Shown here piece after piece: positions 10,791 through 64,000 of a DNA stretch of 64,000 bases. The notes under the pieces were generated by a model, which was given only the letters and a program-made list of their open reading frames with translations, ran no database searches and was not told the origin of the DNA. Positions within the stretch are counted from its first letter, which is position 1, and every line of letters starts with the position of its first letter. The stretch lies in the IMG/VR virus record IMGVR_UViG_3300008117_000011, positions 1 to 64,000 of that record. The stretch is one strand, 5' to 3'. Made by a program: the position numbers and the translations under genes.

Positions 10791-11327
10791 ATGAAAAGAA
10801 TTAGATTATCAGAAAATGATCTTGTCAAGGTGATAAAGAAGGTTCTTAGCGAAAACGAGCAGCCAGAATCAAATAAAGGTAAAAAAGAACCACCAAAACC
10901 TAGATGTATTCCGGAAAACATAATCCCACTTGATGAAATTGTTGGTCAAGCCGATGAATATGTTAAATATTCCCCTGGAATCACAAAAAGAAGAATGGGT
11001 GTTAACTCAATGGTTGATACGTTAGGAATCTTAAACAACATTAGATTATTTAAAGATGTAAAAGATGGTGGATCTCATCTTGCTTATGATATAATGCATA
11101 ACTTAAATCGTTTTAGAAATAAAAACTACTACGATGAAACAAGTGGTGAATGTCATAAAGCTATGGATAAAATCATTGAACTTTACAAAGAAAACGAACA
11201 CGGAACAGAACTTGTTAAAGATATTGAAAGGATTTTGAATCTACAGACTAAGGATGACGAATACACTCCATCCCCAAGAGCTAAAGAGTATTTAAAACAA
11301 TGCGTTAACCTAGTTAAAGGACAATAA
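10791..11327 (+). CDS. Leader-tagged hypothetical protein
   Basis: MKRIRLSENDLVKVIKKVLSE leader. Confidence 0.8.
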   Translation: MKRIRLSENDLVKVIKKVLSENEQPESNKGKKEPPKPRCIPENIIPLDEIVGQADEYVKYSPGITKRRMGVNSMVDTLGILNNIRLFKDVKDGGSHLAYDIMHNLNRFRNKNYYDETSGECHKAMDKIIELYKENEHGTELVKDIERILNLQTKDDEYTPSPRAKEYLKQCVNLVKGQ

Positions 11328-11439: not shown

Positions 11440-11676
11440 ATGAAAGGATTTTTTAGAGAAATGTTAACGGATGAACACGGAGTTGTATCAACAAAGAGAA
11501 TTTCTGGGTTGATTTGTACACTAGGACTTGTTTTAGCTCTAGTTATAAACACCTTTACTCACGGAGATATTAAACCGTCTGATGCTTTAGTTGACGCAGT
11601 TGCTTTACTTGCTTTTGGTTGTCTTGGATTGACCTCAATTGACAAGTTTACAAAGAACAAATTTAAAAAAGATTAA
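11440..11676 (+). CDS. Small two-TM membrane protein
   Basis: Two hydrophobic segments, basic C-terminal tail. Confidence 0.75.
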   Translation: MKGFFREMLTDEHGVVSTKRISGLICTLGLVLALVINTFTHGDIKPSDALVDAVALLAFGCLGLTSIDKFTKNKFKKD

Positions 11677-45048: not shown

Positions 45049-45917
45049 TTAAACTTAATTTCTTCTGGTTTAATTGGCCCTGACTTAAATATAACTTTAT
45101 CATATGTAAATCCTTTTTTTGATTTGATTCCGGTTGTTATTTTCAAATCAGAATCATTTTCAAATATGTAATAAATACCTTTTGTTTTGTTTACAAAAAT
45201 TAAATAATCAACATCGTCTAAATTATATCCAGAAGCTGGATACTTTTGTGTTAAAACATCAAAAGATGTCTTGTTACCATTTAAAAACAAAAGTTGTTTA
45301 ACCTGAAATGTTGCTTTTGTATCTCCTTTTGTTAATATAAAATCAACACCTTGTTTTGCATCACTTTTAGATCCTGGACAAAAATTAATATTACCGGGTA
45401 ATTTAAGTGCGTTGATTAAAGTATCAAATACCGATTTTTCTGATTCAAAACCAAATCTGATTTTTTTTAAATTTTCAATTGCAAGGTTTTCAATCTTATC
45501 TGTATGTAGATTGTTCTTTATGTATTCTTTTACGTATTCAATAAAATTATCAACTGTTTCATCAACTGTTGTTTCAGCTCTAAATGATTTTAAAAGAGAA
45601 TCAAGTACTACACCACTTGTTATAAAGAAATTTATAACAGACCAGTTTGAGTTTGGGACATTCATTTTTTGACTATAATCAGTAAATGTATGTACACCAA
45701 TAACTCCATTAAGTGTATAACAATCAATTGCCGGATTATCAGCGGTTCCCCAATTTCCAAGTGGTATAAAAATTTCCTTAAGTACTCCTAAGAACTTGGA
45801 TTTAAAATCTTTGTTATTTTTTAATGAATCTGAAGTTAATACATTTCTAATTAACTCTTCTTCTTTTATAATTCCCATCAATTTTTTTATTCTACTATTT
45901 TCAACTATACTAGTCAT
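45045..45917 (-). CDS. PD-(D/E)xK nuclease-like protein
   Basis: E...GSKSDAKQGVDFI...FQVK; leader-like ENSRIKKLMGIIKEE; start re-called. Confidence 0.5.
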   Translation of the reverse strand: MTSIVENSRIKKLMGIIKEEELIRNVLTSDSLKNNKDFKSKFLGVLKEIFIPLGNWGTADNPAIDCYTLNGVIGVHTFTDYSQKMNVPNSNWSVINFFITSGVVLDSLLKSFRAETTVDETVDNFIEYVKEYIKNNLHTDKIENLAIENLKKIRFGFESEKSVFDTLINALKLPGNINFCPGSKSDAKQGVDFILTKGDTKATFQVKQLLFLNGNKTSFDVLTQKYPASGYNLDDVDYLIFVNKTKGIYYIFENDSDLKITTGIKSKKGFTYDKVIFKSGPIKPEEIKFK

Positions 45918-46611
45918 ATTTTTCCATATATTTACTATCAATTATGATTGTCTTTGCTTTTTTAGTTACAAGATTTATTTGATCAAGAACAATTCTGTTG
46001 TTACCATCTCTATTTAAAACTAAAGTCCCAGAACCACCCGGTTCGTTATGAATATTTAAATCAATAACTTCCTTTGCCACATTTAATACCCAATTATGAA
46101 ATGATGTTTCACCAAAAAACATTTCATAATATGATCTAACATTCATAATAGATTTGTTTGTTGATGTACTAACCTCATCTACTATAAAATCACCATACCC
46201 ATAAGTAAAATCAATAAGTAATGTATCATAACTTTTTATATAATTAAATAATCGTTCAGATGTGTTATCCGTGTATTGAAATTCTGTTGTCTTTTCTTTA
46301 TTTTCTCGTGCGTCATATTTTGCAACTAAAATTATTTGTCTTTTTTGTGGGTCTATTGTCACATCACACCACCAGGTATTATCCCAATATTCTACTTCCT
46401 CGGTAAACATTTCACTTCCGTGATCTTCTACTAATTTTATTATAAAATCTTCAAAGTAATCTAAAATAGGAACTTTAAATCCTTTTTCAGACCAAAATGC
46501 TGATGGAACATATTCAATTCTTTCAGAATACATATCAATATTAACCCCAATAGGTCCAATTGGATTAAGATATGCCATAAGTGCTTTAAATGTATTTTTA
46601 TAATTCATCAT
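45910..46611 (-). CDS. Tandem-array paralogue 6 (DUF6878-like, most diverged)
   Basis: FKALMAYL N-terminus; FTYGYGD; PGGSGTL. Confidence 0.65.
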   Translation of the reverse strand: MMNYKNTFKALMAYLNPIGPIGVNIDMYSERIEYVPSAFWSEKGFKVPILDYFEDFIIKLVEDHGSEMFTEEVEYWDNTWWCDVTIDPQKRQIILVAKYDARENKEKTTEFQYTDNTSERLFNYIKSYDTLLIDFTYGYGDFIVDEVSTSTNKSIMNVRSYYEMFFGETSFHNWVLNVAKEVIDLNIHNEPGGSGTLVLNRDGNNRIVLDQINLVTKKAKTIIIDSKYMEKYD

Positions 46612-47308
46612 TAAAATTATCTAGTGTTATTTGAATATTCATATCTGTAGGTTGATATTCTTCTTCAAATTCATATCCATCAATTAATACTTTACCATTT
46701 GCGTAAACAATAATTCTACCTTTAAAACCATTTTCACCATTCCAATAAAGATTTACATTACGTTTCATAATATCGTTTACAATGACCCAGTATCTATCTT
46801 CATCTTCACTATCAATTCTTGCGTCTATATCGTTTACATAAGCTTCAAATACTTCACCGTCATCCCATCTTCCATAAAAATGTAATTCAAGTTTTTTAAT
46901 AATATCATCTTCAAATATGTCATAAATAATTTCTTTTGTTCTTGTAGTAATATCATCAAGATTTACCATTTCCTTTTTTTTAATTGATATTTCTTGCTTA
47001 CACTCACTTGTAAAAACAATTCTATTTTCAAAAGGATATATTAAAGCGTATAAATACCAAAGTTCACTATATTCATAATCGTTATATTTTCTAAATTCTG
47101 GTGTAATTTTATTTAGTATTTCACTAAAAATTGAGATAATTGTGTCCGGAGGAGTTACAAGTGATTTTTGTCCGTCACTTTTTCTAAAGTAAAAATGCTT
47201 GTTCCAGTCTGGTTCAATTGTGTTTACATCAAATGGAATATCTGTGTCTACAGTTTTTACTTTTAGACCTTTAAAATACGAAAAAAACATTTTTAATTTA
47301 TTCTTCAT
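46598..47308 (-). CDS. Tandem-array paralogue 5 (DUF6878-like)
   Basis: MKNKLKMFFSYFKG; FYGRWDDGEV; YWNGENGFKG. Confidence 0.7.
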   Translation of the reverse strand: MKNKLKMFFSYFKGLKVKTVDTDIPFDVNTIEPDWNKHFYFRKSDGQKSLVTPPDTIISIFSEILNKITPEFRKYNDYEYSELWYLYALIYPFENRIVFTSECKQEISIKKKEMVNLDDITTRTKEIIYDIFEDDIIKKLELHFYGRWDDGEVFEAYVNDIDARIDSEDEDRYWVIVNDIMKRNVNLYWNGENGFKGRIIVYANGKVLIDGYEFEEEYQPTDMNIQITLDNFNDEL

Positions 47309-47993
47309 CTTCTTGTTTTAAATTATCTAGTGTAACTACAATGTCTAAACTTTCGGTAACATCATCATTTGTATTCCATTCGTGCATAACTTCAATATGG
47401 TTTCTTGTAACTTCAATTGTTCCTTGGGATCCTTCATTTATCTCCCAACCACCAAAATCTTCAAGTAACTGATAACAAATATTTTCAATTTCTCTAGTTA
47501 TTGTTCCAGATTTTTTTCTTGAAGAATAACTATCGTGAACTTGTCCACTATCGCCACCACCATCGTAAGTTATTTCAAGTGAATCAATTCCTTCTTTATC
47601 TAAAAATTTATCAAATTCTTCAAAATACTGAGAAACACTTTCACCATCTTCATCCCTATCATAATATATTCCAGAATCTTCTGTTCCATACTGAGTAAAA
47701 TCTGTACTTTCAAAAACTAATCTATCTGGATATATTGTCCCATCAACAGTAAAGTAATCACTTCCATCACCATAACTTCCAAGCCCACCATCATATAAAT
47801 CTTCAGCGTACAATTCAGCGATATCATAAAATATTTGCTCCATATTTGATGACATCTGAAATCCTGGGTTTTTTGCACAAGTAAAATCTATATAATCAAT
47901 TGAATCTCCATCATTATAAAATTGTATTGTAAAATCAATGTTACAATTTAGACCTCTAACATACCCTAAAAGGGCTTTAAATTTTTTATTCAT
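47298..47993 (-). CDS. Tandem-array paralogue 4 (DUF6878-like, intact motifs)
   Basis: YDGGGDSGQV...FGGWEINEGSQGTI. Confidence 0.75.
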   Translation of the reverse strand: MNKKFKALLGYVRGLNCNIDFTIQFYNDGDSIDYIDFTCAKNPGFQMSSNMEQIFYDIAELYAEDLYDGGLGSYGDGSDYFTVDGTIYPDRLVFESTDFTQYGTEDSGIYYDRDEDGESVSQYFEEFDKFLDKEGIDSLEITYDGGGDSGQVHDSYSSRKKSGTITREIENICYQLLEDFGGWEINEGSQGTIEVTRNHIEVMHEWNTNDDVTESLDIVVTLDNLKQEDEE

Positions 47994-48681
47994 AATCTTC
48001 TATATTATTTGGTGTTAATTCTATTCTCATATTACTCGGAAGTAATCTTTCTTGATGGTGTTTGTAGCTTACTTCTATTTTATTCTTTTCTATTCTCACG
48101 CTACCACTAACTCCGTCAATTCCCCATTCAATAGATTGATCTACAACATCCATAATGTTTTGAGCTATATCATAATATTTCTCTTCAATATTTGAGTCTA
48201 ATTCATAAATGTTTTTTTCATCACCATTTATATTCAAATTTGTAACTTCACCTTCATCTACACCCATCCAAAAATCAATTTCAATAAAATTATTATCGTC
48301 TTTTATATGTTTTTCTAATTCAACAATAGCCCAATCCTGCAATCTTTTTAAATATGTTTTTTTTTCTTTTTTTTCTGTAAATTTTTGATAGTCTTTGGCG
48401 GTAACAATTATTTGATTATCAAATGGTCTAATAGTAATACTTAAAATCCAATAATCAGAATACTCCCTTGAAACATTGTCTAAAATTTCTCTTTTTAATT
48501 TTCTACTAAAAAGTGATTTTATTGCATTGTTAATTGTTAAATTCGTATTCGTTTCTTTACCATCAATCATACAAAGTCCGTCATCATTAAATTCCCAATC
48601 AACCATATCAAATTCTATATCGGCTCGTGGTTTATTAAAACCCCTAAAATAGGCTAATATCATTTTTAATTTATTTTTCAT
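47986..48681 (-). CDS. Tandem-array paralogue 3 (DUF6878-like)
   Basis: MKNKLKMILAYFRG; FWMGVDEGEV; WGIDGVSG. Confidence 0.7.
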   Translation of the reverse strand: MKNKLKMILAYFRGFNKPRADIEFDMVDWEFNDDGLCMIDGKETNTNLTINNAIKSLFSRKLKREILDNVSREYSDYWILSITIRPFDNQIIVTAKDYQKFTEKKEKKTYLKRLQDWAIVELEKHIKDDNNFIEIDFWMGVDEGEVTNLNINGDEKNIYELDSNIEEKYYDIAQNIMDVVDQSIEWGIDGVSGSVRIEKNKIEVSYKHHQERLLPSNMRIELTPNNIEDYE

Positions 48682-49366
48682 CCGTATCATCAAAAAAATC
48701 TGGCGTTATTGTAATGTCCATATCTGTATTGCCCCATTCAACAAGTCTGTTCTCAAGGTCAAGGAAAATATCATCACCCCATATTGTGATATCTCCAGTA
48801 AAACCACCATCATCGGTCCAGTATTTTCCATAATTTTTTGACATTAACTCGTATGTTACATCGTGAAATAACATATCAAGTTCATTTGTTGTTTTAATAA
48901 ACTTGTCATCAAAAAGAATATTAAAAATTTCAACATCCCAAATACCTCTAAAATCAAACTGAATTTTTGTTAAATTATTTTCTTCTTCAATTTCGGTTAT
49001 CTTATCCTGGAATTCTTCAGATAAATCAGAAAACTCCATTTGTAGTTGTTCTGGAACTGAATTTGCGTATTTGCACTCACTTGTAAAATGTATCTCATTT
49101 TCAAATGGATAAATACTAACTTCTAATGACCACCAATCATCTTCGTTATAATCATTATAATGATGAAATGTTGGCATAAGTTTTTTAATAACCTCTTCTA
49201 TAATATCACGAATTGGTTTTGCCGGTTCTATAAACTTTCTAGTACCACCTAAAGATATATCACTAAACTCTTCAATTGTGTTATAACCAAAAGTTACGTT
49301 GAAAAACAACTCCTCTTGTTTAAACCCTCTAAAATATGCAAAAAGTGCTTTTAATTTATTTTTCAT
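48671..49366 (-). CDS. Tandem-array paralogue 2 (DUF6878-like)
   Basis: MKNKLKALFAYFRG; FRGIWD; YWTDDGGFTG. Confidence 0.7.
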   Translation of the reverse strand: MKNKLKALFAYFRGFKQEELFFNVTFGYNTIEEFSDISLGGTRKFIEPAKPIRDIIEEVIKKLMPTFHHYNDYNEDDWWSLEVSIYPFENEIHFTSECKYANSVPEQLQMEFSDLSEEFQDKITEIEEENNLTKIQFDFRGIWDVEIFNILFDDKFIKTTNELDMLFHDVTYELMSKNYGKYWTDDGGFTGDITIWGDDIFLDLENRLVEWGNTDMDITITPDFFDDTDEK

Positions 49367-50031
49367 TCGTTTAACATATCTTCGGTTATTTCAATTGGGT
49401 CCTGACAATCGTTCCAGACTCTCTGCTGCCAAGTTTGTTCTATTGTAATCATTTTTGTTGTTCCATAATACTCAGCAATTTCAAACTCACCTCTGGATCC
49501 GTCATCTATTTCCCATCCTCCAAATGCGGCTTCTAATCTGTCATAAAGATAATTTAATAGTTTTTCATATTCACCACCCCATCTTACAATTTCGGTTTGA
49601 CCATTAATTTCAATATCCTCGTGTATTTCACCGGAATCACCATAACCACTAAATTGTCCTTTTACAGATTCAATACCTTTTTCTTTAAGAAATTCTAAAA
49701 CTTCTTCATCTCTTATGTCATCAGAATATGTGTCAGGTTGTTCGTCAAAATTTTCACATCTAACACTATAAAACATTTTATTTTCAGATGGTTTTAAATC
49801 TAAAGTAATACTTTTATATTCTGTTTCACTATAAAGTTGTTCTATATCATATTCTTCAGCTAAAAATATTGCAATACCAGTTATTATATCTCTAATATTT
49901 CCTGGTACTGACATATTACTACTAAAGCTGTACCAGTCAACTTCTCCATCATAATATGCAAAAGAAAATGATATATTATCTTTCTTTAATGACTTAAAAA
50001 AAGACATTAGAACTTTAAATTTTTTTTTCAT
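49363..50031 (-). CDS. Tandem-array paralogue 1 (DUF6878-like, intact motifs)
   Basis: FSGYGDSGEI...FGGWEIDDGSRGEF. Confidence 0.75.
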   Translation of the reverse strand: MKKKFKVLMSFFKSLKKDNISFSFAYYDGEVDWYSFSSNMSVPGNIRDIITGIAIFLAEEYDIEQLYSETEYKSITLDLKPSENKMFYSVRCENFDEQPDTYSDDIRDEEVLEFLKEKGIESVKGQFSGYGDSGEIHEDIEINGQTEIVRWGGEYEKLLNYLYDRLEAAFGGWEIDDGSRGEFEIAEYYGTTKMITIEQTWQQRVWNDCQDPIEITEDMLNE

Positions 50032-56297: not shown

Positions 56298-56891
56298 ATG
56301 AAAAAGTTTATATTATTTTTATTTTTAGTTTTTCCTTTTGTTTCTTTATCACAAAAAAAATTAAGAGATAGTGTCATTGTAAATGCTGACATATTCAAAA
56401 TCATTTATTCAGAAAAACTACAACAACCTCTTTCTGTAAAATATAATGTTCAATGTCCTTCTGGATCTGCGTCAAGAAAAGGTCTTGATTTTTTTACTTG
56501 TGATTCAATATTAACTTCAGATGGTAAGGATTATGATAACAATGTTTGGGATAAAGGTCATATGGCACCTGCCGCGGATTTTAATTGTACAAGAGATCTA
56601 ATGAAAAAAACTTTCACTTATTTAAATTGTACTTTACAACATCAAGATCTTAATAGAACCACTTGGAGGCTTTTAGAAACATATGAAAGATCGTTAGCTT
56701 TAAAATATAAAGTAGTTTCGGTTGAGGTTATTTGTGAATTTACTAAATCCTCTAAAGTGTTACCTTCAGGTGCAACTATACCCGATGGTTATTATAAAAT
56801 AATTAAATATAATAACACAACCGAAACCTATTATTTCAAAAACGAAAAACCTTCTTCAACTGATTATAAAAAATATCAAGTTAAAGGTTGA
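56298..56891 (+). CDS. Secreted DNA/RNA non-specific endonuclease (NucA/EndoG family)
   Basis: Signal peptide; WDKGHMAPAAD...TFTYLN..LQ...LN..TW..LE. Confidence 0.85.
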   Translation: MKKFILFLFLVFPFVSLSQKKLRDSVIVNADIFKIIYSEKLQQPLSVKYNVQCPSGSASRKGLDFFTCDSILTSDGKDYDNNVWDKGHMAPAADFNCTRDLMKKTFTYLNCTLQHQDLNRTTWRLLETYERSLALKYKVVSVEVICEFTKSSKVLPSGATIPDGYYKIIKYNNTTETYYFKNEKPSSTDYKKYQVKG

Positions 56892-57270
56892 TCTCAAACC
56901 GGGATTTCATCGTTTGAATCTTATCTTCCGGAACTCCGTGCTTATTCACACCTCCGTGTCTATTTTCAACAATTACTGAAAATACGGTGTATCCATATTC
57001 TTTGGCCATATTTACATAAGGCTCCATCTCCCACTCTTGTGTGAAAGTGTTTGACACAACAATTTTTGGGTATTCCAAAATCATATCCCCTTTAACCATT
57101 CCCTGACACCACTGGTGAGCATCTTTAATCTTTGTTGGGTCAAAATTGTAATTACCGGATTCACCAATAAAATACATATCAGCCTCATAGTGATTGCCAC
57201 CCAGTGTTTTTGCAAATGTTGATTTTCCGGATCCCGGAATTCCTCTTACGATATAAAGTACTTTTTCCAT
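56881..57270 (-). CDS. P-loop (AAA_33 / N4BP2-like) kinase
   Basis: VRGIPGSGKST, EADMYF, VSNTF, HGVP; start re-called at MEKVL. Confidence 0.85.
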   Translation of the reverse strand: MEKVLYIVRGIPGSGKSTFAKTLGGNHYEADMYFIGESGNYNFDPTKIKDAHQWCQGMVKGDMILEYPKIVVSNTFTQEWEMEPYVNMAKEYGYTVFSVIVENRHGGVNKHGVPEDKIQTMKSRFEINL

Positions 57271-57271
57271 C

Positions 57272-57481
57272 TTATTCTGATTTAAAGGTTTCGTTGTAGT
57301 ATTGTTCAACATTCCTATCCGCTTCCATTATAGCATCAACCCCTCCTTGCACATAGAAATTATATAAATGCTCCTTCTCCATTTCTTTGGCTTTTTCAAA
57401 TGCCTTTCCCATTTCTAATAAGTTGCCAGAATGTTTTATGTATTGCTCTTTTAACCATTCTACTGCTGTCTGTTTTTTCAT
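57272..57481 (-). CDS. 'KQTAVEWL...YYNETFKSE' small phage protein
   Basis: Common small-protein pattern in Bacteroidota phages. Confidence 0.7.
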   Translation of the reverse strand: MKKQTAVEWLKEQYIKHSGNLLEMGKAFEKAKEMEKEHLYNFYVQGGVDAIMEADRNVEQYYNETFKSE

Positions 57482-57493
57482 ATCATACACGTT

Positions 57494-57706
57494 TTAAAGG
57501 GTATCTCCTATTTGCCATTTACCACAATCAGCATAAAATCTAGTATAGTCCCATTTACCTATAAATACATATTCACACCTACCATTTCTATATTGTGTAA
57601 TCTCAGCACATATAGAAATTCCTTCTTTTATCTCCTTTCCATTATAATGATTGTCACAACTTACTAATATCATCATAATAAAAACTCCAATTAAGTATTT
57701 TCTCAT
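57494..57706 (-). CDS. Small lipoprotein
   Basis: MRKYLIGVFIMMILVSC lipobox. Confidence 0.65.
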   Translation of the reverse strand: MRKYLIGVFIMMILVSCDNHYNGKEIKEGISICAEITQYRNGRCEYVFIGKWDYTRFYADCGKWQIGDTL

Positions 57707-57825
57707 ATCACACACGTTTTATAAATTAGACATAAAAAAGCTGTAATTATACAACTCCCACATATAAACAAAAATCTTTTGTTGGGGGATAAATCTTCCC
57801 ATAACCATTTGTTAAATCTTTCCAT
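57703..57825 (-). CDS. 40 aa TM micro-protein
   Basis: MERFNKWLWEDLSPNKRFLFICGSCIITAFLCLIYKTCVI. Confidence 0.5.
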   Translation of the reverse strand: MERFNKWLWEDLSPNKRFLFICGSCIITAFLCLIYKTCVI

Positions 57826-57843
57826 ATCACACACGTTTTAAAA

Positions 57844-57906
57844 TTAAGGTCTATCACCCCAAGTAAACACTTGTTCTTCTAACCATTCTACTGCTGTCTT
57901 TTTCAT
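57844..57906 (-). pseudogene. Truncated KQTAVEWL paralogue, 20 aa
   Basis: MKKTAVEWLEEQVFTWGDRP*. Confidence 0.5.
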
Positions 57907-57921
57907 CTTATTCTGATTTAA

Positions 57922-57999
57922 TTATCTTTTCATTATGTTGTAACACATTGCGATTCCAGTAATCATTCCCATTAAAAAAAATATAATCTCTAGGTGCAT
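57922..57999 (-). CDS. 25 aa hydrophobic micro-protein
   Basis: MHLEIIFFLMGMITGIAMCYNIMKR. Confidence 0.45.
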   Translation of the reverse strand: MHLEIIFFLMGMITGIAMCYNIMKR

Positions 58000-58074
58000 C
58001 TTATTCTGATTTAAAGGTTAATAAATTTAATTACTACTAATGGTTGTTCTTCATTTTCTGATTTTATTCTCATC

Positions 58075-58221
58075 TTATTCTGATTTAAAGGTTAAAGGGT
58101 TTTCTGTCCAAATTGTGCCATCATCTTCTCTCATTGCTTCAATCATTGTCCAAGCAAACCAATAGGGTAAACTTACTGGAAGAAATATAATTGATAATAT
58201 TACTATTTGATATCTTTTCAT
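58075..58221 (-). CDS. 48 aa TM micro-protein ending TFKSE
   Basis: MKRYQIVILSIIFLPVSLPYWFAW...LTFKSE; TATATTTG 4 nt before ATG. Confidence 0.55.
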   Translation of the reverse strand: MKRYQIVILSIIFLPVSLPYWFAWTMIEAMREDDGTIWTENPLTFKSE

Positions 58222-58238
58222 ATCACAAATATAATAAA

Positions 58239-58652
58239 TTATTCTGATGTTTCTAATCTTTCAAGCATTTCTTTTATTCTCTTTACAGATTTTTCTTTTA
58301 ACGGTAATGGATTTCCATCTTCATCAATATATACAAATTTGGTATGTGTCTTTAGAACAACAGCTTGTCTACCGGTCCTTACATTGTGAGCTCTTGCTTC
58401 AATATATAATGTAACTGATGTATTTCCAATAGACGCCGGATATCCAAATATTTTAAGTAGTTGTCCTTCTTTACTTGGTTTTTCAAATACACATTTGTCA
58501 ATTGACACTGTGACCATTCTTGGTGTGTCACATAGTTGCATCGCATAAGCAACAGCGGCTGCGTCAAGCCATGCCAATAATTTTCCACCAAAAAGATTTC
58601 CGTGAAATCCAAGATCTGATTTTTTAATTGGGTGTGTTGTTATTAATTCCAT
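58239..58652 (-). CDS. Acyl-CoA thioesterase (hotdog fold, YciA-like)
   Basis: DLGFHGNLFGGKLLAWLD...MVTVSID...IGNTSVT...FVYIDEDG.P. Confidence 0.85.
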   Translation of the reverse strand: MELITTHPIKKSDLGFHGNLFGGKLLAWLDAAAVAYAMQLCDTPRMVTVSIDKCVFEKPSKEGQLLKIFGYPASIGNTSVTLYIEARAHNVRTGRQAVVLKTHTKFVYIDEDGNPLPLKEKSVKRIKEMLERLETSE

Positions 58653-58654
58653 TA

Positions 58655-59026
58655 TTATATCTTATCCCATTTATTATCGTGATTATATGAAAAAGAACCA
58701 ATATGTTCTTTATTCCATTGATTTGGTTCAATTAGTGATAAGAATATATCACCATTGTTAGAGTAATACAAATGATAAATTTGTCCAATTACCGGCTCAA
58801 AATTAAACTTTGCTTTATATACCAGTTCATTCCATTTGTATTCCTCAATTAGTTTTTCGTACTCCTTTTTCAAATTGTTAAATCTATCTTCAAATTGTTT
58901 ATTTACATTTTTAATTCTTGGTTCCTTCCAGGCTTGTATATTTTCTGTTCTAATAGCCGGAGCTCCAATATTTGACCCATATGGTAAAATACCCGGGTTG
59001 TCTGCAACGTTATCTGGTTTTTCCAT
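58655..59026 (-). CDS. DUF2452-like protein
   Basis: LPYGSNIGAP...VY.AKFNFEPVIGQIYHLY...FLSLIEP..W. Confidence 0.7.
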   Translation of the reverse strand: MEKPDNVADNPGILPYGSNIGAPAIRTENIQAWKEPRIKNVNKQFEDRFNNLKKEYEKLIEEYKWNELVYKAKFNFEPVIGQIYHLYYSNNGDIFLSLIEPNQWNKEHIGSFSYNHDNKWDKI

Positions 59027-59407: not shown

Positions 59408-59602
59408 ATGAAATTTTTAAGATATCTTTTAATTGAGTTAACAAATAAATACGGATCCTTTGTTTGGTTTGGGACTCACGTATCAATGACACAAACAGAT
59501 TGGCACTGGATTTTAGAAAGTTTTTTATGTCTTTTTGTTAATATTATAATTATTTTTTCTTTATATTTGCAGTATAAAGACCTTGAGGATGGAAAAAGAT
59601 AA
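59408..59602 (+). CDS. Small membrane protein
   Basis: MKFLRYLL...; TM near C-terminus. Confidence 0.55.
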   Translation: MKFLRYLLIELTNKYGSFVWFGTHVSMTQTDWHWILESFLCLFVNIIIIFSLYLQYKDLEDGKR

Positions 59603-60179
59603 GATAAATGTACTTGAAAAAATATCTCTTTGGTGGAGATTTGAGGGTAGATATTACCACAAGGATTTTTATCGTGGAGTTAAAAATCTTATAAGATGGT
59701 TTCCTACTATTTGGAAAGATAGAGATTGGGATGATACCTTTATCTTTGAAATACTCCGTGTTAAATTGGAACATCAAGCAAAATACATTGGTGATAGGGG
59801 TATTCATATTAGTGCCAAAAGAGATTCTGAAAAGATGAGACTTGTTGCAAAACTTATCAAATTACAACAAGATGATTTCTACGGAATGGAGTATATGGAT
59901 TATCACGACACTAAATACGATTTTATTCCAACCGATGAAACAAAAAAATGGTTCAGAATGGAGGACTCTTTGATTTCTGAAAACTTTGATGATTACTTTA
60001 AAAAGTATCCTCGTCAGTACAAAAAAGTATTGTCAGGAGAAATTAATAGATTTGGTAAAGAAGTTGATGAAACTGACAAACAAAGAATTGCAATGGAAAT
60101 TGCCCACGAAAACCAAGACCGTTGTAGAAAACTTATTTTTAAAATTATGGAATCTGAAATTTCAAGATGGTGGGATTAA
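59589..60179 (+). CDS. Conserved phage hypothetical protein
   Basis: GVKNL.RW.PTIWKDRDWD...KL......I...WWD pattern. Confidence 0.8.
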   Translation: MEKDKINVLEKISLWWRFEGRYYHKDFYRGVKNLIRWFPTIWKDRDWDDTFIFEILRVKLEHQAKYIGDRGIHISAKRDSEKMRLVAKLIKLQQDDFYGMEYMDYHDTKYDFIPTDETKKWFRMEDSLISENFDDYFKKYPRQYKKVLSGEINRFGKEVDETDKQRIAMEIAHENQDRCRKLIFKIMESEISRWWD

Positions 60180-60412
60180 CGAATTATGTTAATCTCACTA
60201 TCAGTTTCAATAACTACTCTAGCACCACAACTTAAAATTGGTTTTTGGTCACCACTTCCACAATACTTTATAACACTAGGTCCAAGGATTTCAACCTCAT
60301 TACAATACGTATTTTTTCTCCCTTCCTTTATTGTTATAACCGGAAGGTCAGTATCTTTAGTTTTATTGGACCTAATGTGATGTTGATTAACGTGAATTCG
60401 TTTCTTTGCCAT
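60176..60412 (-). CDS. Conserved small phage protein
   Basis: MAKKRIHVNQH.IR.N...PVIT.K...V.I.GP...LSCGARV.IET; start re-called. Confidence 0.75.
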   Translation of the reverse strand: MAKKRIHVNQHHIRSNKTKDTDLPVITIKEGRKNTYCNEVEILGPSVIKYCGSGDQKPILSCGARVVIETDSEINIIR

Positions 60413-60434: not shown

Positions 60435-61253
60435 CTACTTAAGTAAATTATAAAACTCTTTAAAGTGTTTAATACGGTCTGAAAGTCCATTGGTACCACC
60501 ATTTACTCGTTTTGTTACGGCTGCAACGTCTGTGTCTGTAGTTCCTTTATCACATAGTGACCACAATTTATTTACGTCAAAGAAAAATGCGGCCGATGCC
60601 AATGGATATTTTGTTGCAACAAGATCTGGATTTGCAACACAATCTTCACCAATAAACTGTGTAAACTTTGAATAGTTTCCTTTACCTGTTAGTTGGATGT
60701 ATCCTCTTCCTCTAAATTTCCATCCTTCACCAGACGCTTCATTTCCATTTCCCATTCTATCGGCATATACTCTTGCAGCAATTTTTTCTGGTTGTCTAGC
60801 GTATTGTTCGGCAAGTGTTGATGGAAAGTATTTTCCAAATGTTCCTCTGAGTCCTTGAGCGGAATAATTAAGATTTTCGTTAACAGCTTTAAAGTTTCCG
60901 GATTCGTGAGCACATTGTGATAAGAAGTGTGCAAGTCTTAAATTATTTGTAATATTAAATTTCTTTGCGGTTTCTGGTATTTGTGTTAACACAGAATCTG
61001 GAATATGACCTTTAAGTTTATCAATGTTTAATCCTTCAACTTTTGCTATTACAACATCTTCTTTGATAACACCACCAAACATCTTTGACCAGGTTCCATC
61101 ACCAACAACACCATCGGCTTTTAATCCATTTTTATTTTGCCAGTCTTTAACAGCCGTTTCAGTTTTTGGTCCAAAGGAACCATCAGCTGTTAATCCTAAT
61201 TTTGATTGTAATTTTTTTACATCTTCACCGGTTGATCCTACTTTAAGTAACAT
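60435..61253 (-). CDS. Endolysin: PG-binding domain + glycoside hydrolase family 19
   Basis: LLKVGSTG.DVKKLQ...DG.FG..T; LAHFLSQCAHES...FRGRGYIQLTG...TKRVNGG.NGL.DR. Confidence 0.9.
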   Translation of the reverse strand: MLLKVGSTGEDVKKLQSKLGLTADGSFGPKTETAVKDWQNKNGLKADGVVGDGTWSKMFGGVIKEDVVIAKVEGLNIDKLKGHIPDSVLTQIPETAKKFNITNNLRLAHFLSQCAHESGNFKAVNENLNYSAQGLRGTFGKYFPSTLAEQYARQPEKIAARVYADRMGNGNEASGEGWKFRGRGYIQLTGKGNYSKFTQFIGEDCVANPDLVATKYPLASAAFFFDVNKLWSLCDKGTTDTDVAAVTKRVNGGTNGLSDRIKHFKEFYNLLK

Positions 61254-61264
61254 AATTTATAGTT

Positions 61265-61942
61265 TTAATTTTTATTTTCTGTTGCATATTTTATACCCAT
61301 AATTGTTCCTACAATTGAGAAAGCATTTGTTAATAAAATTCCAAATATATTAGACCAGGCCGCACTTATTACTTGTGTGTCTTTACCCATTATCATTGTA
61401 AACACATAAACCCCAGTTGTGACAATTCCGACCCCAACTATAATGTACAAAGCAACTCTTACAATTGTTGATATTAATTCAGTTTGATTTCTTTTTTGTA
61501 AAAGGTCAAGATCATTCTCAGCATTTTGTTTTGCTGTCTCGGCAGTAACTTTTGCTTGTTCGGCTTTTACCATTTCAATTTTTAATTCTTCGGTAAGTCT
61601 TAAATTATCTTGTTTCCATTCGTTAAGTTCCCGGTTTTGAACCTCAAAAGTTAGTCTTGATTCTTCAACTTCTTTTAATGTTTCCTGGAGTTCAGATAGA
61701 ATCCTTTCATTTTCTTGATTTGCAACAACCAACTCATCATTTTGTTTTTGAATTTGTTTTGTCATTTCAAGACGTTTTTTTCTTTTTTCTGTGTCATTTG
61801 TTAGACAATCTTCAAGGTACTTTTTGAACTCCGGGTCATTTTCATTATCAATAATTTTGGTAATATTTCCTTCAAGGCCTATTTTTTTCTTATTATATAG
61901 GTCAATAAGGGTACGTTTTGTATTACCATCAATTTTAATCAT
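61265..61942 (-). CDS. Coiled-coil protein with two C-terminal TM helices
   Basis: Long heptad region, then IVRVALYIIVGVGIVTTGVYVF and IFGILLTNAFSIVGTIMG. Confidence 0.8.
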   Translation of the reverse strand: MIKIDGNTKRTLIDLYNKKKIGLEGNITKIIDNENDPEFKKYLEDCLTNDTEKRKKRLEMTKQIQKQNDELVVANQENERILSELQETLKEVEESRLTFEVQNRELNEWKQDNLRLTEELKIEMVKAEQAKVTAETAKQNAENDLDLLQKRNQTELISTIVRVALYIIVGVGIVTTGVYVFTMIMGKDTQVISAAWSNIFGILLTNAFSIVGTIMGIKYATENKN

Positions 61943-62376
61943 CTGTAAATTTTAAATGGTGCTGTTCTATTTTTATAACCCTCAAAATCTTTTTTGAACT
62001 CTTCCAATCTTGGTTCTATTTCGTCCGATTTTATAATCCAAAACTGTGCTCCAGCCTGTAAAGCCTTTGCTTGTTCTTCCGGTTCATTTGAAGATGAAAT
62101 TATCCCAATAACTACGTGATTTCCGTATTGGAAGTTTATTCTTCTAATAAGTTCAATTCCATCAAACGAACTTCCAATTATGTTTAAATCAACAAACACA
62201 CATTCAGGTTTATCCTCTGTGTTGTTTTCTTCAAACCATTTTTTAAATCTTCTTTCCGCCTCGTCGGCGCTTGTTATAGAATTTAAAGAAAGACTTATGT
62301 CTAGTAGAGAACAGCTATCTTCAAATACCAAGTGGAAAAGATCCTCATCATCAACTAATAAAATAGATTCAATCAT
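61939..62376 (-). CDS. Stand-alone response-regulator receiver (CheY/Rcp1-like)
   Basis: ILLVDDED, VFVDLN (phospho-Asp), DGIELIR, IISSS, WIIK; no output domain. Confidence 0.9.
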   Translation of the reverse strand: MIESILLVDDEDLFHLVFEDSCSLLDISLSLNSITSADEAERRFKKWFEENNTEDKPECVFVDLNIIGSSFDGIELIRRINFQYGNHVVIGIISSSNEPEEQAKALQAGAQFWIIKSDEIEPRLEEFKKDFEGYKNRTAPFKIYR

Positions 62377-64000
62377 TTTTTTAATTTTATTTTCATTTTG
62401 GTCCCAATGTCATTCTTTTCACAAGAAACACTAAAACCGTGTTCATTTAATATCGCCAGACATATGTTTAAACCAAGTCCGGTTCCCGATTCCTTTTGTC
62501 CTTCTTTTCTAACATATGGTTTTGATAACAAGTTAAATTCTTCTTGTGTTAATCCTCTACCGTTATCCTGAACTACAAGGTCATTATTTTCTAAATAAAT
62601 ATGTACATATTTTGTATCGTTATCATTATATTTTAATCCGTTTCTAATAAGGTTGTCAACCGCAGTACAAAATAGTGGTTCGTTAACATCAATATTTAAT
62701 AATTCATCAATTTTAACTTGTGATTTATATGATGTTGTTGCAAGGTAATTTTCAAGTATTACTTTTAAATCACATTCTGTTTTATTTAAAACAACATCTT
62801 TTTTAACTAGATTTGTAAACTCAAACACACCTTTATACACTTTTTGTGTGTGTAACAATCCTTCTTTTAACATTTTTAATGGTGCTTCAAGTTTCAAATT
62901 AGAAATCACATCATCTGTTAATCTTCTTTCAAGGGATGAGATACCTCTTGGTATATATGTGTTAATTCCAGAATGCATATCGTGTCTTAATATTTTTGCG
63001 GCATGTTCTAGATATGTATTTTGTTTTTGTATTTGATTTGAGTTTTCAACTATTTCAGTAATATCCCTAGCAATTTTTAAAACTCTATATGGTTTGCCTT
63101 CATCATTTATAATTGGGTTATAAGTTGCACTTAAATGAATTGGTGACCCATCTTTTTTCTTTCTAATTATTTCCCCACTATAATACTTCCCTTCTTTTAA
63201 TTTTTTCCAAAAGTTTTTATATTCTTTTGAATTTATATCTTCATCATATAAGAATATACTGTGGTGTTTACCTTTTATTTCCTCATTTGTATATCCCATT
63301 GCGTCTAAAAAAGAATTATTTGCATAGCAAATTTCACCATCAATAGTGAATTCAATAACAGGACTTGATCTATTGATAGCATCCATTCTATTTGTTAATT
63401 CTGCTTCTTTTTGAATAACTTTTTTTGTTAAGGTGTCTCCTTCTTTTACCGAAAAAGCAAATGAATAAAGTGATGCTAGCATTTGAGCAAAATTTACTTC
63501 ATATTCTTTCCATTCCCTACTGGTCAAACTTTCAATACATATAACACCAAGAACATCTCCTTTATGAATGATTGGGACATCAAGCATTGATTTGATTCCA
63601 AGCGGTTTCAAATAACTTTCTGTAAAACAAGATGTCGCATGGTGCGTTTCGGCATTATTTGCAACTATTATTGGATTAATTAATAGTGCCAAAAAATACT
63701 CCTGGAAATCTTTTTTAAATAGTTCAATATCTTGATACCACTTATGCTCCGCTTTTATATATAACTGATGACAAATAATTGAAGTTCTATCGTTATTATA
63801 TAACCAAATAGAACACCTATCAGTATTAATTGTTTGTGTAACATCTTGAGTTAATGCCTTTGCTCCTTCATTTACATTTCCTTCATAAAATAAAGAATTG
63901 TGAGATTGTGAGATAATAACATCATTTAGTTCTTTTTGGTACAAACTAATAAATTTTGTTTTTTTACTTTTTTTGATGTACTCAAAAATGTTTACAATAA
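62373..64000 (-). CDS. Sensor histidine kinase GAF-PAS-HisKA-HATPase, 5' end outside window
   Basis: GAF (RCSIWL...GIKSMLDVPI..G.VLGVIC.E), PAS (ANNSFL..MGY...GKHHSIF), ILRHDM, NLIRNGLKY, DNGRG, GTGLGL; frame open to 64000. Confidence 0.92.
   Translation of the reverse strand, partial: IVNIFEYIKKSKKTKFISLYQKELNDVIISQSHNSLFYEGNVNEGAKALTQDVTQTINTDRCSIWLYNNDRTSIICHQLYIKAEHKWYQDIELFKKDFQEYFLALLINPIIVANNAETHHATSCFTESYLKPLGIKSMLDVPIIHKGDVLGVICIESLTSREWKEYEVNFAQMLASLYSFAFSVKEGDTLTKKVIQKEAELTNRMDAINRSSPVIEFTIDGEICYANNSFLDAMGYTNEEIKGKHHSIFLYDEDINSKEYKNFWKKLKEGKYYSGEIIRKKKDGSPIHLSATYNPIINDEGKPYRVLKIARDITEIVENSNQIQKQNTYLEHAAKILRHDMHSGINTYIPRGISSLERRLTDDVISNLKLEAPLKMLKEGLLHTQKVYKGVFEFTNLVKKDVVLNKTECDLKVILENYLATTSYKSQVKIDELLNIDVNEPLFCTAVDNLIRNGLKYNDNDTKYVHIYLENNDLVVQDNGRGLTQEEFNLLSKPYVRKEGQKESGTGLGLNICLAILNEHGFSVSCEKNDIGTKMKIKLKK

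What the first reader, a model, noticed from the sequence alone, without database searches (positions are those of the whole stretch)
60435..64000. Two-component sensor wired into a lysis operon
Seen: a GAF-PAS histidine kinase, a stand-alone receiver, a coiled-coil protein with two TM helices and a PG-binding/GH19 endolysin lie in one direction. There are ATGA overlaps at 62373-76 and 61939-42 and an 11 bp gap before the endolysin. The H-box, N/G boxes and phospho-Asp look intact. Established: receivers without an output domain act by protein-protein contact, a signal-less endolysin needs a membrane partner, and complete two-component systems are rare in phages. Inference: the phage may sense host or environmental state and gate lysis timing through the membrane protein, acting as a holin/antiholin-like effector.
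Basis: partly seen in the sequence, partly recalled or inferred. Interest (0 to 1): 0.8.

Follow-up and report, generated by a model that had tools for sequence, protein, structure and literature searches.

The report
Phage sensor system wired to lysis
A large freshwater phage carries its own sensor kinase and receiver, coupled to an undescribed two-helix membrane protein that sits beside cell-wall-degrading enzymes in many related phages, so these phages may sense a signal to decide when to burst the host.

Summary
On the minus strand lie a GAF-PAS histidine kinase, a stand-alone receiver (RR), a 225-aa coiled-coil protein with a C-terminal two-helix membrane hairpin (MP), and a PG_binding_1/GH19 endolysin. 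The overlaps and the 11-bp gap are as stated. One correction: the kinase runs off the window end and has two further N-terminal membrane helices.

Comparative data partly support the interpretation.
- HK-RR-MP is a conserved trio in 63 unique IMG/VR loci. A lysin is linked in 44. Direct adjacency belongs mostly to one clade, and deep branches lack it.
- MP is modular. Its C-terminal hairpin also occurs fused directly to PAS or GAF sensors. Of 64 unique such fusion genes, 49 lie within about 1.5 kb of a GH19 or M15 lysin, often among holin-like and spanin-like genes.
- MP's N-terminal module always follows the RR. In Bacteroidota it is fused to a kinase core instead of the hairpin.

Best reading: the N-module docks the RR and the hairpin is a signal-gated lysis-cassette effector, either a holin or a holin regulator. 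No function has been tested. The MP family matches nothing in Pfam, PHROGs, NCBIfam or PADLOC, and GenBank phages lack it.

The parts
62373..64000 (-). Histidine kinase, cut by the window end. The true start is about 154 nt beyond the window. Full protein: 593 aa = 2 TM + GAF + PAS + DHp (H-box RHDMHSGIN) + HATPase_c.
61939..62376 (-). Stand-alone receiver (RR), 145 aa, with D9/D10, phospho-acceptor D63, S94/S95 and K116. It overlaps the HK stop and the MP start by ATGA.
61733..61942 (-). MP N-terminal module (aa 1-70): a small domain plus the start of the long helix. Conserved motifs LEGN..K..D..F..Y and RKKRLEITKQIQxQN. Proposed RR-docking input module.
61478..61732 (-). MP central coiled-coil stalk (about aa 71-155). 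Variable in length and sequence between relatives.
61286..61477 (-). MP membrane hairpin (aa 156-219): TM1, a roughly 13-residue loop, and TM2 (WSNxFGILLTNAFSIVGTIMGxKY, nearly invariant). Proposed output module.
60435..61253 (-). Endolysin with an N-terminal PG_binding_1 domain and a GH19 catalytic domain. No hydrophobic N-terminal segment is visible in the sequence.
60176..60412 (-). P78, a small soluble protein of unknown function (phrog_8676). It is the last gene of the minus-strand block, and its stop overlaps the stop of a convergent plus-strand gene (59583..60179).
11440..11676 (+). hol78, a 78-aa protein with two TM helices and a lysine-rich tail. It is a holin candidate. In relatives its homologues lie directly beside the MP-type hairpin gene and/or a lysin; here it is 50 kb away.
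61342..61349 (-). The only Bacteroidota-type -7 promoter motif (TAnnTTTG) on the minus strand of the block. It lies 96 nt before the lysin start, inside MP codons, and occurs no more often than chance.

Best explanation
The block encodes a phage two-component pathway whose output is a membrane protein of the lysis machinery, not a transcription factor.

Proposed chain of events:
1. The membrane-anchored GAF-PAS kinase senses a cytoplasmic or membrane-linked cue and phosphorylates the stand-alone receiver on D63.
2. The receiver docks on the small N-terminal module of MP.
3. The signal travels down MP's long, probably dimeric, coiled coil. That helix runs without a break into TM1.
4. This changes how the highly conserved TM hairpin packs or oligomerises. 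The hairpin then either forms or helps to form the membrane lesion that releases the signal-less GH19 endolysin, or holds back or releases a separate small holin (the hol78 family).

The net effect is to advance or delay lysis.

Shown here: the domain content, the intact motifs, the gene order, the modularity of MP, and the recurrent placement of the hairpin in lysis cassettes.

Inferred: phosphotransfer, RR-to-N-module docking, the direction of the effect, the nature of the signal, and any action on the membrane.
For: 1. Operon-like island. Five co-directional genes have junctions of -4, -4, +11 and +22 nt. They are bounded by opposite-strand genes on both sides, and no terminator-like site lies on their strand.

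2. The kinase and receiver motifs are intact and invariant.

3. RR and MP overlap in all 63 unique trio loci, and in a divergent trio (P0159).

4. In a Bacteroidota MAG contig (L102, with T9SS-substrate and CreD neighbours) and in unbinned metagenome contigs with non-phage neighbours such as an AraC-type regulator (L100, P0243 contigs), the same RR (69% identical to the window RR in L100) is followed, overlapping, by a protein with MP's N-module fused to HisKA-HATPase_c. Hairpin proteins that lack the N-module have no homologue of this RR within 6 kb. For the three checked by Pfam, none has any Response_reg gene. The N-module therefore tracks the RR.

5. The hairpin behaves as an output module. 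It is fused through one continuous helix to PAS-PAS, PAS or GAF sensors (AlphaFold2 model), and other N-terminal parts also occur. The hairpin is the most conserved part of the protein. TM2 is nearly invariant at 44-86% overall identity, and a 33-residue stretch is invariant in 16 fusion proteins.

6. Lysis context.
- 44 of 63 unique trio loci are lysin-linked: 34 directly adjacent, 6 after three ORFs, 2 divergent next to the HK, and 2 with a convergent M15 lysin plus hol78.
- 49 of 64 unique sensor-hairpin fusion genes lie within about 1.5 kb of a GH19 or Peptidase_M15_3 lysin. In 48 of these the lysin is on the same strand, and there are at least nine different arrangements. Examples are hol78-FUS-M15, FUS-hol78-GH19, and GH19-hol78-TM-FUS followed by an i-spanin-like and then a lipoprotein gene.

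7. The lysin has no signal or SAR segment, so it needs a membrane partner (sequence; established holin-endolysin logic).
Against: - The earliest-branching trio lineages and about 30% of trio loci have no lysin within up to 8 kb. Their neighbours are DnaK, an aaRS-like gene, Mom, a nucleotidyltransferase and the like. Direct adjacency could therefore be clade-inherited synteny.
- 11 of 64 fusion genes also lack a detectable lysin. In one of these the next gene is a 5'-3' exonuclease.
- MP matches no holin, antiholin or defence-effector family. It is not homologous to hol78.
- The near-invariance of TM2 is unlike typical fast-evolving holins. It would also fit binding to a conserved host membrane target.
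- A separate holin candidate exists, so MP is not needed as the hole-former.
- An internal lysin promoter cannot be excluded.
- The only RNA run gave four short contigs and says nothing about operon structure.
- There is no experimental evidence of any kind.
Confidence: 0.55

Rival explanations
1. The HK-RR-MP trio is a phage signalling module with a membrane output unrelated to lysis. Examples would be superinfection exclusion, control of host envelope, secretion or motility functions, or controlled depolarisation. The lysin next to it in the window is a neighbour by descent.
For: Deep-branching trio lineages and 19 of 63 loci have no lysin nearby. The neighbours there are heterogeneous accessory genes. 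TM2 is conserved far more strongly than is usual for holins, which fits a conserved host target. MP matches no holin family.
Against: The same hairpin, when fused to PAS or GAF sensors in a different phage group, lies within 1.5 kb of GH19 or M15 lysins in 77% of unique genes, in many different orders. It is interleaved with holin-like, i-spanin-like and lipoprotein genes. Linkage to two or three non-homologous lysin families is hard to explain by descent alone.
Confidence: 0.25
2. MP is a membrane-tethered decoy or eavesdropper on a host pathway. It copies the RR-binding N-module of a Bacteroidota kinase. With the phage kinase and RR, it captures or rewires the host HK-RR-HK2 cascade. The hairpin serves mainly as an anchor.
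For: The phage RR is 69% identical to the RR of the HK-RR-HK2 context in L100. The kinase DHp segment is invariant across the aligned phage and non-phage kinases. The N-module is shared with kinases in a Bacteroidota MAG and similar contigs.
Against: An anchor would not be the most conserved part of the protein. Sensor-hairpin fusions have neither the N-module nor an RR, yet they keep the hairpin and the lysis context. The phage carries a complete pathway of its own.
Confidence: 0.12
3. MP is itself the sole holin of this phage, a large class-II-like holin with a regulatory cytoplasmic domain. The small hol78 protein has another role.
For: MP has a two-TM topology with both ends predicted inside. 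Its helices are rich in small and polar residues. In the window clade it lies immediately upstream of the lysin, where no other TM gene is in the block.
Against: hol78 lies directly downstream of an M15 lysin in L042 and between the fusion gene and lysins in several loci. It has the classic small-holin look. This rival is a sub-case of the best explanation, and sequence alone cannot separate it from a regulator role.
Confidence: 0.2

Closest known systems
Phage T4 lysis inhibition: holin T with antiholins RI and RIII (own knowledge)
   Same: A large holin-type membrane protein of about 220 aa is controlled after translation, through protein contacts on its soluble domains, in response to an environmental signal. 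The outcome is a shift in lysis timing. The genes act together with a cytoplasmic endolysin.
   Different: There is no sequence relationship (no PHROG or Pfam hit). T has one TM helix and a periplasmic domain, whereas MP has a cytoplasmic coiled coil and a TM hairpin. In T4 the signal is superinfection sensed in the periplasm. Here the sensors are cytoplasmic GAF/PAS domains acting through phosphotransfer or direct fusion.
Staphylococcus aureus LytSR controlling lrgAB/cidABC holin-like and antiholin-like genes (own knowledge)
   Same: A two-component system is functionally tied to holin-like membrane proteins and to murein hydrolase activity.
   Different: LytSR is bacterial and acts through transcription (LytR has a LytTR DNA-binding domain). 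Here the RR has no output domain and the link would be protein to protein. MP has no LrgA or CidA similarity.
Sensor-TM effector proteins of abortive-infection systems such as Pycsar PycTM and CBASS 2TM/4TM effectors (own knowledge)
   Same: A ligand-binding cytoplasmic sensor is fused to a short TM module that damages the membrane when the sensor is activated. This is the same logic as the PAS/GAF-hairpin fusions.
   Different: Those are host defence genes. No PADLOC model matches MP or the fusions. The sensors here are PAS, GAF or an RR-docking module. The genes are phage-borne and sit in lysis cassettes.
Single-domain receivers that regulate a kinase by binding it, such as DivK with DivL/CckA (own knowledge)
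   Same: A stand-alone receiver acts by docking on a partner. The HK-RR-(N-module-HisKA-HATPase_c) version found in a Bacteroidota MAG and similar contigs looks like such a cascade.
   Different: The N-module is an undescribed domain with no Pfam or PDB relative. In the phage the downstream partner is a membrane hairpin instead of a kinase.
Class II holins and pinholins such as phage 21 S68 (own knowledge)
   Same: Two TM helices with both ends predicted in the cytoplasm, glycine- and small-residue-rich helices, and a gene next to the endolysin.
   Different: MP is three times longer, with a 155-residue cytoplasmic N-terminal part, a very short C-terminal tail and an unusually conserved TM2. 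There is no sequence similarity.

Membership tests
Two-component system (histidine kinase + response regulator) | Kinase has a DHp helix with a phospho-accepting His (H-box) | tested here: met
   RHDMHSGIN within KNTYLEHAAKILRHDMHSGINTYIPRG is invariant in 14 kinases from phage, Bacteroidota-MAG and unbinned metagenome contigs. The Pfam HisKA model itself does not match, so this is a divergent DHp subfamily.
Two-component system (histidine kinase + response regulator) | Kinase has a HATPase_c domain with N, G1 and G2 boxes | tested here: met
   HATPase_c at E 1e-13. DNLIRNGLKYN, DNGRG and GLGL are conserved. It aligns to QseC, KdpD and HK853 structures.
Two-component system (histidine kinase + response regulator) | Receiver has the acidic pair, the phospho-acceptor Asp, a Ser/Thr and a Lys | tested here: met
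   Response_reg match over residues 5-117. D9, D10, D63, S94/S95 and K116 were read from the sequence. All are kept in the 69%-identical RR of L100.
Two-component system (histidine kinase + response regulator) | Phosphotransfer from kinase to receiver | not testable with these tools
   This needs purified proteins. Only adjacency and overlap of the genes are shown.
Holins (functional class) | Membrane protein with at least one TM helix encoded in a lysis cassette beside the endolysin | tested here: met
   Two TM segments. MP is directly upstream of the lysin in the window and in 34 of 63 trio loci. The hairpin fusions lie within 1.5 kb of a lysin in 49 of 64 unique genes.
Holins (functional class) | Small size with a hydrophilic, charged C-terminal tail | tested here: inconclusive
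   MP has 225 aa with a 155-residue cytoplasmic N-terminal part, and its tail is only about 6-9 residues (KYATENKN). The co-occurring hol78 fits this feature better.
Holins (functional class) | Sequence membership in a described holin family | tested here: not met
   No hit in Pfam, PHROGs or NCBIfam. The ESM Atlas hits for the hairpin score only about 0.6. Foldseek against PDB found nothing at E below 1.
Holins (functional class) | Forms lethal membrane lesions that release endolysin | not testable with these tools
   Requires expression and lysis assays.
T4-type antiholins (RI, RIII) | Homology to RI or RIII | tested here: not met
   No PHROG or Pfam match for MP.
LytSR / Cid-Lrg system | LytTR-type DNA-binding receiver and LrgA/CidA-type membrane proteins | tested here: not met
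   The RR has a receiver domain only. MP has no LrgA/CidA-type Pfam hit.
Anti-phage defence sensor-TM effectors | Match to a known defence-system protein model | tested here: not met
   No PADLOC hit for MP, the RR, the HK or the PAS and GAF fusions at E <= 0.05.
GH19 phage endolysins with a PG_binding_1 domain | N-terminal peptidoglycan-binding domain plus a GH19 catalytic domain | tested here: met
   PG_binding_1 at E 1e-13, Glyco_hydro_19 at E 5e-8, and phrog_181 endolysin at E 1e-72. The nearest DNA matches are lysins or chitinases of Flavobacterium, Cellulophaga and Olleya phages.

The most novel reading that the evidence does not exclude
A widespread, undescribed family of freshwater Bacteroidota phages gates host lysis after translation with sensory proteins. 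A conserved TM-hairpin lysis effector is driven either directly by fused PAS or GAF sensors (one-component form) or, in jumbo phages like this one, by a complete phage two-component system. In the latter, the stand-alone receiver docks on a new adaptor domain that was borrowed from a host kinase cascade. This would be a new output class for two-component signalling and a sensory lysis clock in phages.
Probability: 0.4. Interest if true: 0.88.

Novelty: new variant of a known kind. Interest (0 to 1): 0.8.

Why it matters
Lysis timing is a central life-history trait of phages. Apart from T4 lysis inhibition and holin/antiholin ratios, little is known about how it responds to signals.

If the hairpin is a signal-gated lysis component, it would show several things:
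- Phages use PAS, GAF and two-component sensing to decide when to burst the cell.
- A receiver domain can act on a membrane effector through a dedicated docking module.
- This module was exchanged between Bacteroidota kinases and phage lysis proteins.

The system offers compact parts for experiments: a sensor, a coiled coil and a TM hairpin. It would give a testable handle on what intracellular cues matter to environmental phages. Several full tests are now well defined, because natural short-circuit variants (sensor fused to hairpin) exist alongside the three-protein version.

Tried and rejected
- DNA and protein searches of 50,697 GenBank phage records: only the lysin has relatives. MP and the hairpin have none, and the HK gives only partial PAS or ATPase matches.
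- Family libraries for MP (Pfam, PHROGs, NCBIfam, PADLOC): nothing.
- ESM Atlas for MP and for its hairpin alone: only MP's own viral clusters, or scores near 0.6.
- Foldseek of the MP model against PDB: no match at E below 1, as expected for a long helix.
- Profile of the N-module against PDB: nothing.
- Profile-profile test of MP against the hol78 family: no homology, probability 0.8%. The idea that MP is a holin domain fused to a regulator domain of the hol78 kind is therefore rejected.
- Metatranscriptome look-up: one run held four exact 151-nt contigs (two in MP, two in the HK). This is no evidence on operon structure.
- Sigma-70 promoter and terminator scan: counts are at chance. A Bacteroidota -7 motif lies before the lysin but is not significant.
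- LOV photoreceptor idea for the PAS domain: rejected. GKHHSIF stands in place of the Cys-containing LOV motif. Partial, sub-threshold NifL- and YtvA-type PAS matches are leads only.
- CheZ- or CheC-like phosphatase motif in the MP helix (E59xxxQ63): position 59 varies (E, D, K, S) in alignment A2, so this was not pursued.
- Alternative lysins downstream of MP in lysin-less loci: the genes there are DnaK, an aaRS-like gene, Mom-like, a nucleotidyltransferase and unknowns. M15 lysins were found only in L042 and L049.
- Four genes next to lysin-less fusion genes were searched against PDB: one is a 5'-3' exonuclease and three have no match.
- Literature searches found no description of a phage two-component system with a membrane or lysis output.
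- Co-folding of the RR with MP was not possible with the tools, which predict single chains only.


Full report
**1. What is in the window**

The ORF listing shows four tightly packed minus-strand genes: HK (62373 to the window end), RR (61939..62376), MP (61265..61942) and LYS (60435..61253).
- Pfam gives GAF, PAS and HATPase_c for the kinase, and Response_reg alone for the 145-aa RR.
- Pfam gives nothing for the 225-aa MP, and PG_binding_1 plus Glyco_hydro_19 for the lysin.
- PHROGs gives phrog_181 endolysin (E 1e-72) for LYS and nothing for MP.
- The two ATGA overlaps and the 11-nt gap were read directly.
- A fifth gene, P78 (60176..60412, phrog_8676, function unknown), follows after 22 nt. 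Its stop overlaps a convergent plus-strand gene.

**2. Correction to the kinase**

The window is part of IMG/VR contig UViG_3300008117_000011, which is 223,671 bp long. On that contig (L082) the kinase frame continues upstream of the TTG at 63944 to an ATG about 154 nt beyond the window end. This adds 70 residues with two hydrophobic helices. The real protein has 593 aa: 2 TM, GAF, PAS, DHp and HATPase_c.

The next gene upstream is on the other strand. HK-RR-MP-LYS-P78 therefore forms a five-gene island bounded by opposite-strand genes, and no terminator-like site lies on its strand. This fits one transcription unit but does not prove it. The only RNA run with matches gave four 151-nt contigs. 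A single Bacteroidota-type -7 motif lies 96 nt before the lysin start, at chance frequency.

**3. The signalling proteins look functional**

- In an alignment of 14 kinases, from phage contigs, a Bacteroidota MAG contig (L102) and an unbinned metagenome contig (L100), the DHp segment KNTYLEHAAKILRHDMHSGINTYIPRG is invariant. So are the N, G1 and G2 boxes. Pfam's HisKA model does not match, so this is a divergent DHp type.
- The RR carries D9, D10, D63, S94/S95 and K116.
- Sensor parts are shuffled among relatives: TM-GAF-PAS, GAF-PAS-PAS, PAS-PAS or PAS alone. Some loci carry a second kinase between the HK and the RR.

**4. Synteny of the trio**

A total of 97 related IMG/VR loci were fetched.
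- In every locus that holds MP, the RR lies directly upstream and overlaps it, and a kinase lies upstream of the RR.
- Among 63 unique loci, the GH19 lysin follows MP directly in 34 (gaps of 11-37 nt). It follows after three small ORFs in 6, and lies divergently beside the kinase in 2.
- Two more loci (L042, L049) have a Peptidase_M15_3 lysin plus a small two-TM gene converging on the end of MP.
- The remaining 19 show no lysin within the available flank. In 5 of them that flank is the full 8 kb on both sides. Their downstream genes are DnaK, a class II aaRS-like gene, Mom-like, a nucleotidyltransferase or unknowns.
- On a tree of RR+MP, direct adjacency is concentrated in one well-supported clade of 34 rows that includes the window. 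The deepest branches lack a nearby GH19 lysin.
- A still more divergent trio (P0159) also has no lysin within 7 kb.

So the trio is the conserved unit. The window's exact arrangement is frequent but clade-bound.

**5. Anatomy of MP**

AlphaFold2 with a 14-sequence alignment (mean pLDDT 84.6) gives three elements:
- a small N-terminal domain (residues 1-36);
- one uninterrupted helix from residue 37 to 185, which runs into TM1;
- a short loop and a second helix, 190-222.

Heptad periodicity of residues 37-150 exceeds 299 of 300 shuffles.

Conservation is bipolar. The N-terminal module (LEGN..K..D..F..Y, RKKRLEITKQIQxQN) and above all TM2 (WSNxFGILLTNAFSIVGTIMGxKY, 17 invariant positions) are conserved. 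The stalk varies in sequence and length.

The family is large: 6,410 proteins at E <= 1e-3 in the 90% database and 264 representatives at 50% identity.

**6. MP is built from two separable modules**

Among the representatives:
- The C-terminal stalk-plus-hairpin is found fused to a GAF domain like that of the window kinase (P0139), and to one or two PAS domains like that of the kinase (P0180, P0176). Other N-terminal parts also occur.
- The N-terminal module is found fused to HisKA-HATPase_c in soluble kinases of 318-349 aa (P0243, P0248, P0251, P0259).

The N-module kinases lie in non-phage-looking contexts. In a Bacteroidetes MAG contig (L102) the order is PAS3-HK, RR (143 aa), N-module kinase, with T9SS-substrate and CreD genes around it. 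In L100 the order is HK, RR, N-module kinase, AraC-type regulator. The L100 RR is 69% identical to the window RR, and there too it overlaps the start of the N-module gene.

None of the 83 hairpin-fusion loci has a homologue of this RR within 6 kb. The three whose gene tables carry Pfam marks have no Response_reg gene at all. The N-module and the RR therefore occur together or not at all.

This is the main basis for inferring that the N-module is the RR's docking site and the hairpin is the output.

**7. The hairpin sits in lysis cassettes**

The PAS-PAS-hairpin family is abundant in a second group of phage contigs of about 50-135 kb: 253 IMG/VR stretches, of which 80 were fetched. Three GAF fusions were also fetched.

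Of 64 unique fusion genes, 49 have a GH19 or Peptidase_M15_3 lysin within about 1.5 kb, and 44 within 800 nt. In 48 of the 49 the lysin is on the same strand. The orders differ widely:
- lysin directly after the fusion gene (+20 to +140 nt);
- lysin directly before it (-14 to -29 nt);
- an M15 lysin overlapping the fusion stop by 4 nt (P0180 contigs);
- hol78, fusion, M15;
- fusion, hol78, GH19;
- GH19, hol78, TM protein, fusion, then an N-terminal-TM coiled-coil protein (i-spanin-like) and a lipoprotein with a lipobox (o-spanin-like).

For a random gene in a genome of about 100 kb with one or two lysins, proximity of this kind would be expected in a few per cent of cases. Shared ancestry inflates the count. 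However, the many arrangements and the use of non-homologous lysins argue that the linkage is maintained.

Eleven fusion genes with adequate flanks show no lysin from my panel. In one the neighbour is a 5'-3' exonuclease.

AlphaFold2 of P0176 (pLDDT 77) shows two PAS folds, then one continuous helix (246-326) into TM1 and the hairpin. A 33-residue stretch covering the loop and TM2 is invariant in 16 fusion proteins of 75-91% identity.

**8. A separate holin candidate**

A family of 78-93-aa proteins (hol78) has two TM helices and a lysine-rich tail. It lies directly after an M15 lysin in L042 and L049, directly after MP (convergent) in L083, and beside the fusion gene in many loci.
- The window's copy is at 11440..11676 on the plus strand, 50 kb from the lysin.
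- It matches no PHROG or NCBIfam family.
- It is not homologous to the MP hairpin.
- Its presence makes a regulator (antiholin-like) or co-holin role for MP at least as likely as a sole-holin role.

**9. Mechanism proposed**

Shown:
- an intact kinase and receiver;
- conserved overlap of the RR and MP genes;
- co-distribution of the RR and the N-module;
- the hairpin as a conserved, transferable C-terminal module joined to cytoplasmic sensors by one helix;
- recurrent placement among lysis genes;
- a lysin without an export signal.

Inferred: the kinase phosphorylates the RR. RR~P (or the unphosphorylated RR) binds the N-module. A change in coiled-coil register or rotation is passed into TM1. 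This alters hairpin packing or oligomerisation, and thereby hole formation or holin inhibition, which shifts the time of lysis.

The cue is unknown. The sensors are cytoplasmic, and the PAS domain gives partial, sub-threshold matches to NifL- and YtvA-type PAS models without the LOV cysteine. A metabolic or redox state of the infected cell is therefore a reasonable guess, no more. Because the phage RR and kinase are so close to those of the L100/L102 cascade, cross-talk with a host pathway is possible.

**10. Rivals**

- (a) The trio has a membrane output unrelated to lysis, and the lysin is a neighbour by descent. This is favoured by the lysin-less deep branches and by the unusually strong conservation of TM2. 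It is disfavoured by the lysis-cassette context of the fusions.
- (b) MP is a decoy for a host pathway and the hairpin is a mere anchor. This is disfavoured because the hairpin is the best-conserved part and persists without the N-module.
- (c) MP is the only holin. This cannot be separated from a regulator role by sequence.

**11. Comparison with known systems and novelty**

In function, the nearest analogue is T4 lysis inhibition, where a large holin is controlled through its soluble domains in response to a signal. In logic, the fusions resemble the sensor-TM effectors of abortive-infection systems. LytSR-Cid/Lrg is the known case of a two-component system tied to holin-like proteins, but it acts through transcription. 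None is related by sequence, and all library tests for membership failed.

Literature searches found no description of a phage two-component system with a membrane or lysis output. No GenBank phage in the collection carries the module.

I rate it a new variant of a known kind (signal-controlled lysis), built from an undescribed protein family and an undescribed receiver-docking module.

**12. Limits**

Everything about function rests on gene context and domain architecture. Spanin-like and holin-like labels are based on topology only. Host assignment to Bacteroidota rests on three things: the lysin's nearest relatives, the Bacteroidetes-MAG homologues and the low G+C content.

Noticed in passing
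window 62373-64000 and beyond (L082:7791-8000): The kinase gene runs off the window end. The missing 70 N-terminal residues contain two TM helices, so the kinase is membrane-anchored and not soluble.
   Followed up: yes
window 11440-11676 (+): A 78-aa two-TM protein with a lysine-rich tail (hol78 family) is a holin candidate. In relatives it lies beside lysins and the MP-type hairpin gene. Here it sits next to a conserved 178-aa unknown gene (10791-11327), and the pair is also syntenic in L063.
   Followed up: partly
window 45910-50031 (-): A tandem array of five to six diverged paralogues of about 230 aa (21-33% identity). One member tested against PHROGs had no hit.
   Followed up: partly
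window 1-64000: None of the ten ORFs tested (nine of the largest, 306-835 aa, plus one 231-aa array member) matches any PHROG at 1e-5. There is no tRNA gene. G+C is about 29% throughout. This part of the genome is almost entirely of unknown function.
   Followed up: partly
window 56298-58652: Accessory genes just downstream of the block: a DNA/RNA non-specific endonuclease (56298-56891, +), an AAA_33 kinase-like protein (56881-57312, -), a 4HBT thioesterase (58239-58652, -) and a DUF2452 protein (58655-59026, -).
   Followed up: no
L016:5545-7559, L049:6164-7555: Some relatives carry a second histidine kinase (about 465 aa, with the same DHp motif), with or without a 204-aa unknown ORF, inserted between the first kinase and the RR. 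This suggests that several inputs converge on one receiver.
   Followed up: partly
L102:3669-7050; L100:179-2523: A Bacteroidetes MAG contig (L102) and an unbinned metagenome contig (L100) encode HK, a single-domain RR, and a second kinase whose N-terminus is the MP N-module. This looks like an undescribed receiver-regulated kinase cascade.
   Followed up: partly
L082:4923-5675: A GIY-YIG / I-TevI-like homing endonuclease gene lies about 2 kb upstream of the kinase on the same contig, outside the window.
   Followed up: no
L103 (WBXG01000047.1): A contig binned as a Verrucomicrobia MAG carries the HK-RR-MP trio followed by a 611-aa ORF, in the position where trio phage contigs such as L006 carry a DnaK-type gene. 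It is probably a phage contig mis-binned into the MAG.
   Followed up: no
P0200, P0166, P0185 (representative proteins): A few database proteins join MP parts to unrelated sequence. P0200 carries a Pfam FecCD permease. By eye, P0166 starts like a glycosyltransferase and P0185 like TsaD. These are probably assembly or gene-calling chimeras and were not used as evidence.
   Followed up: no
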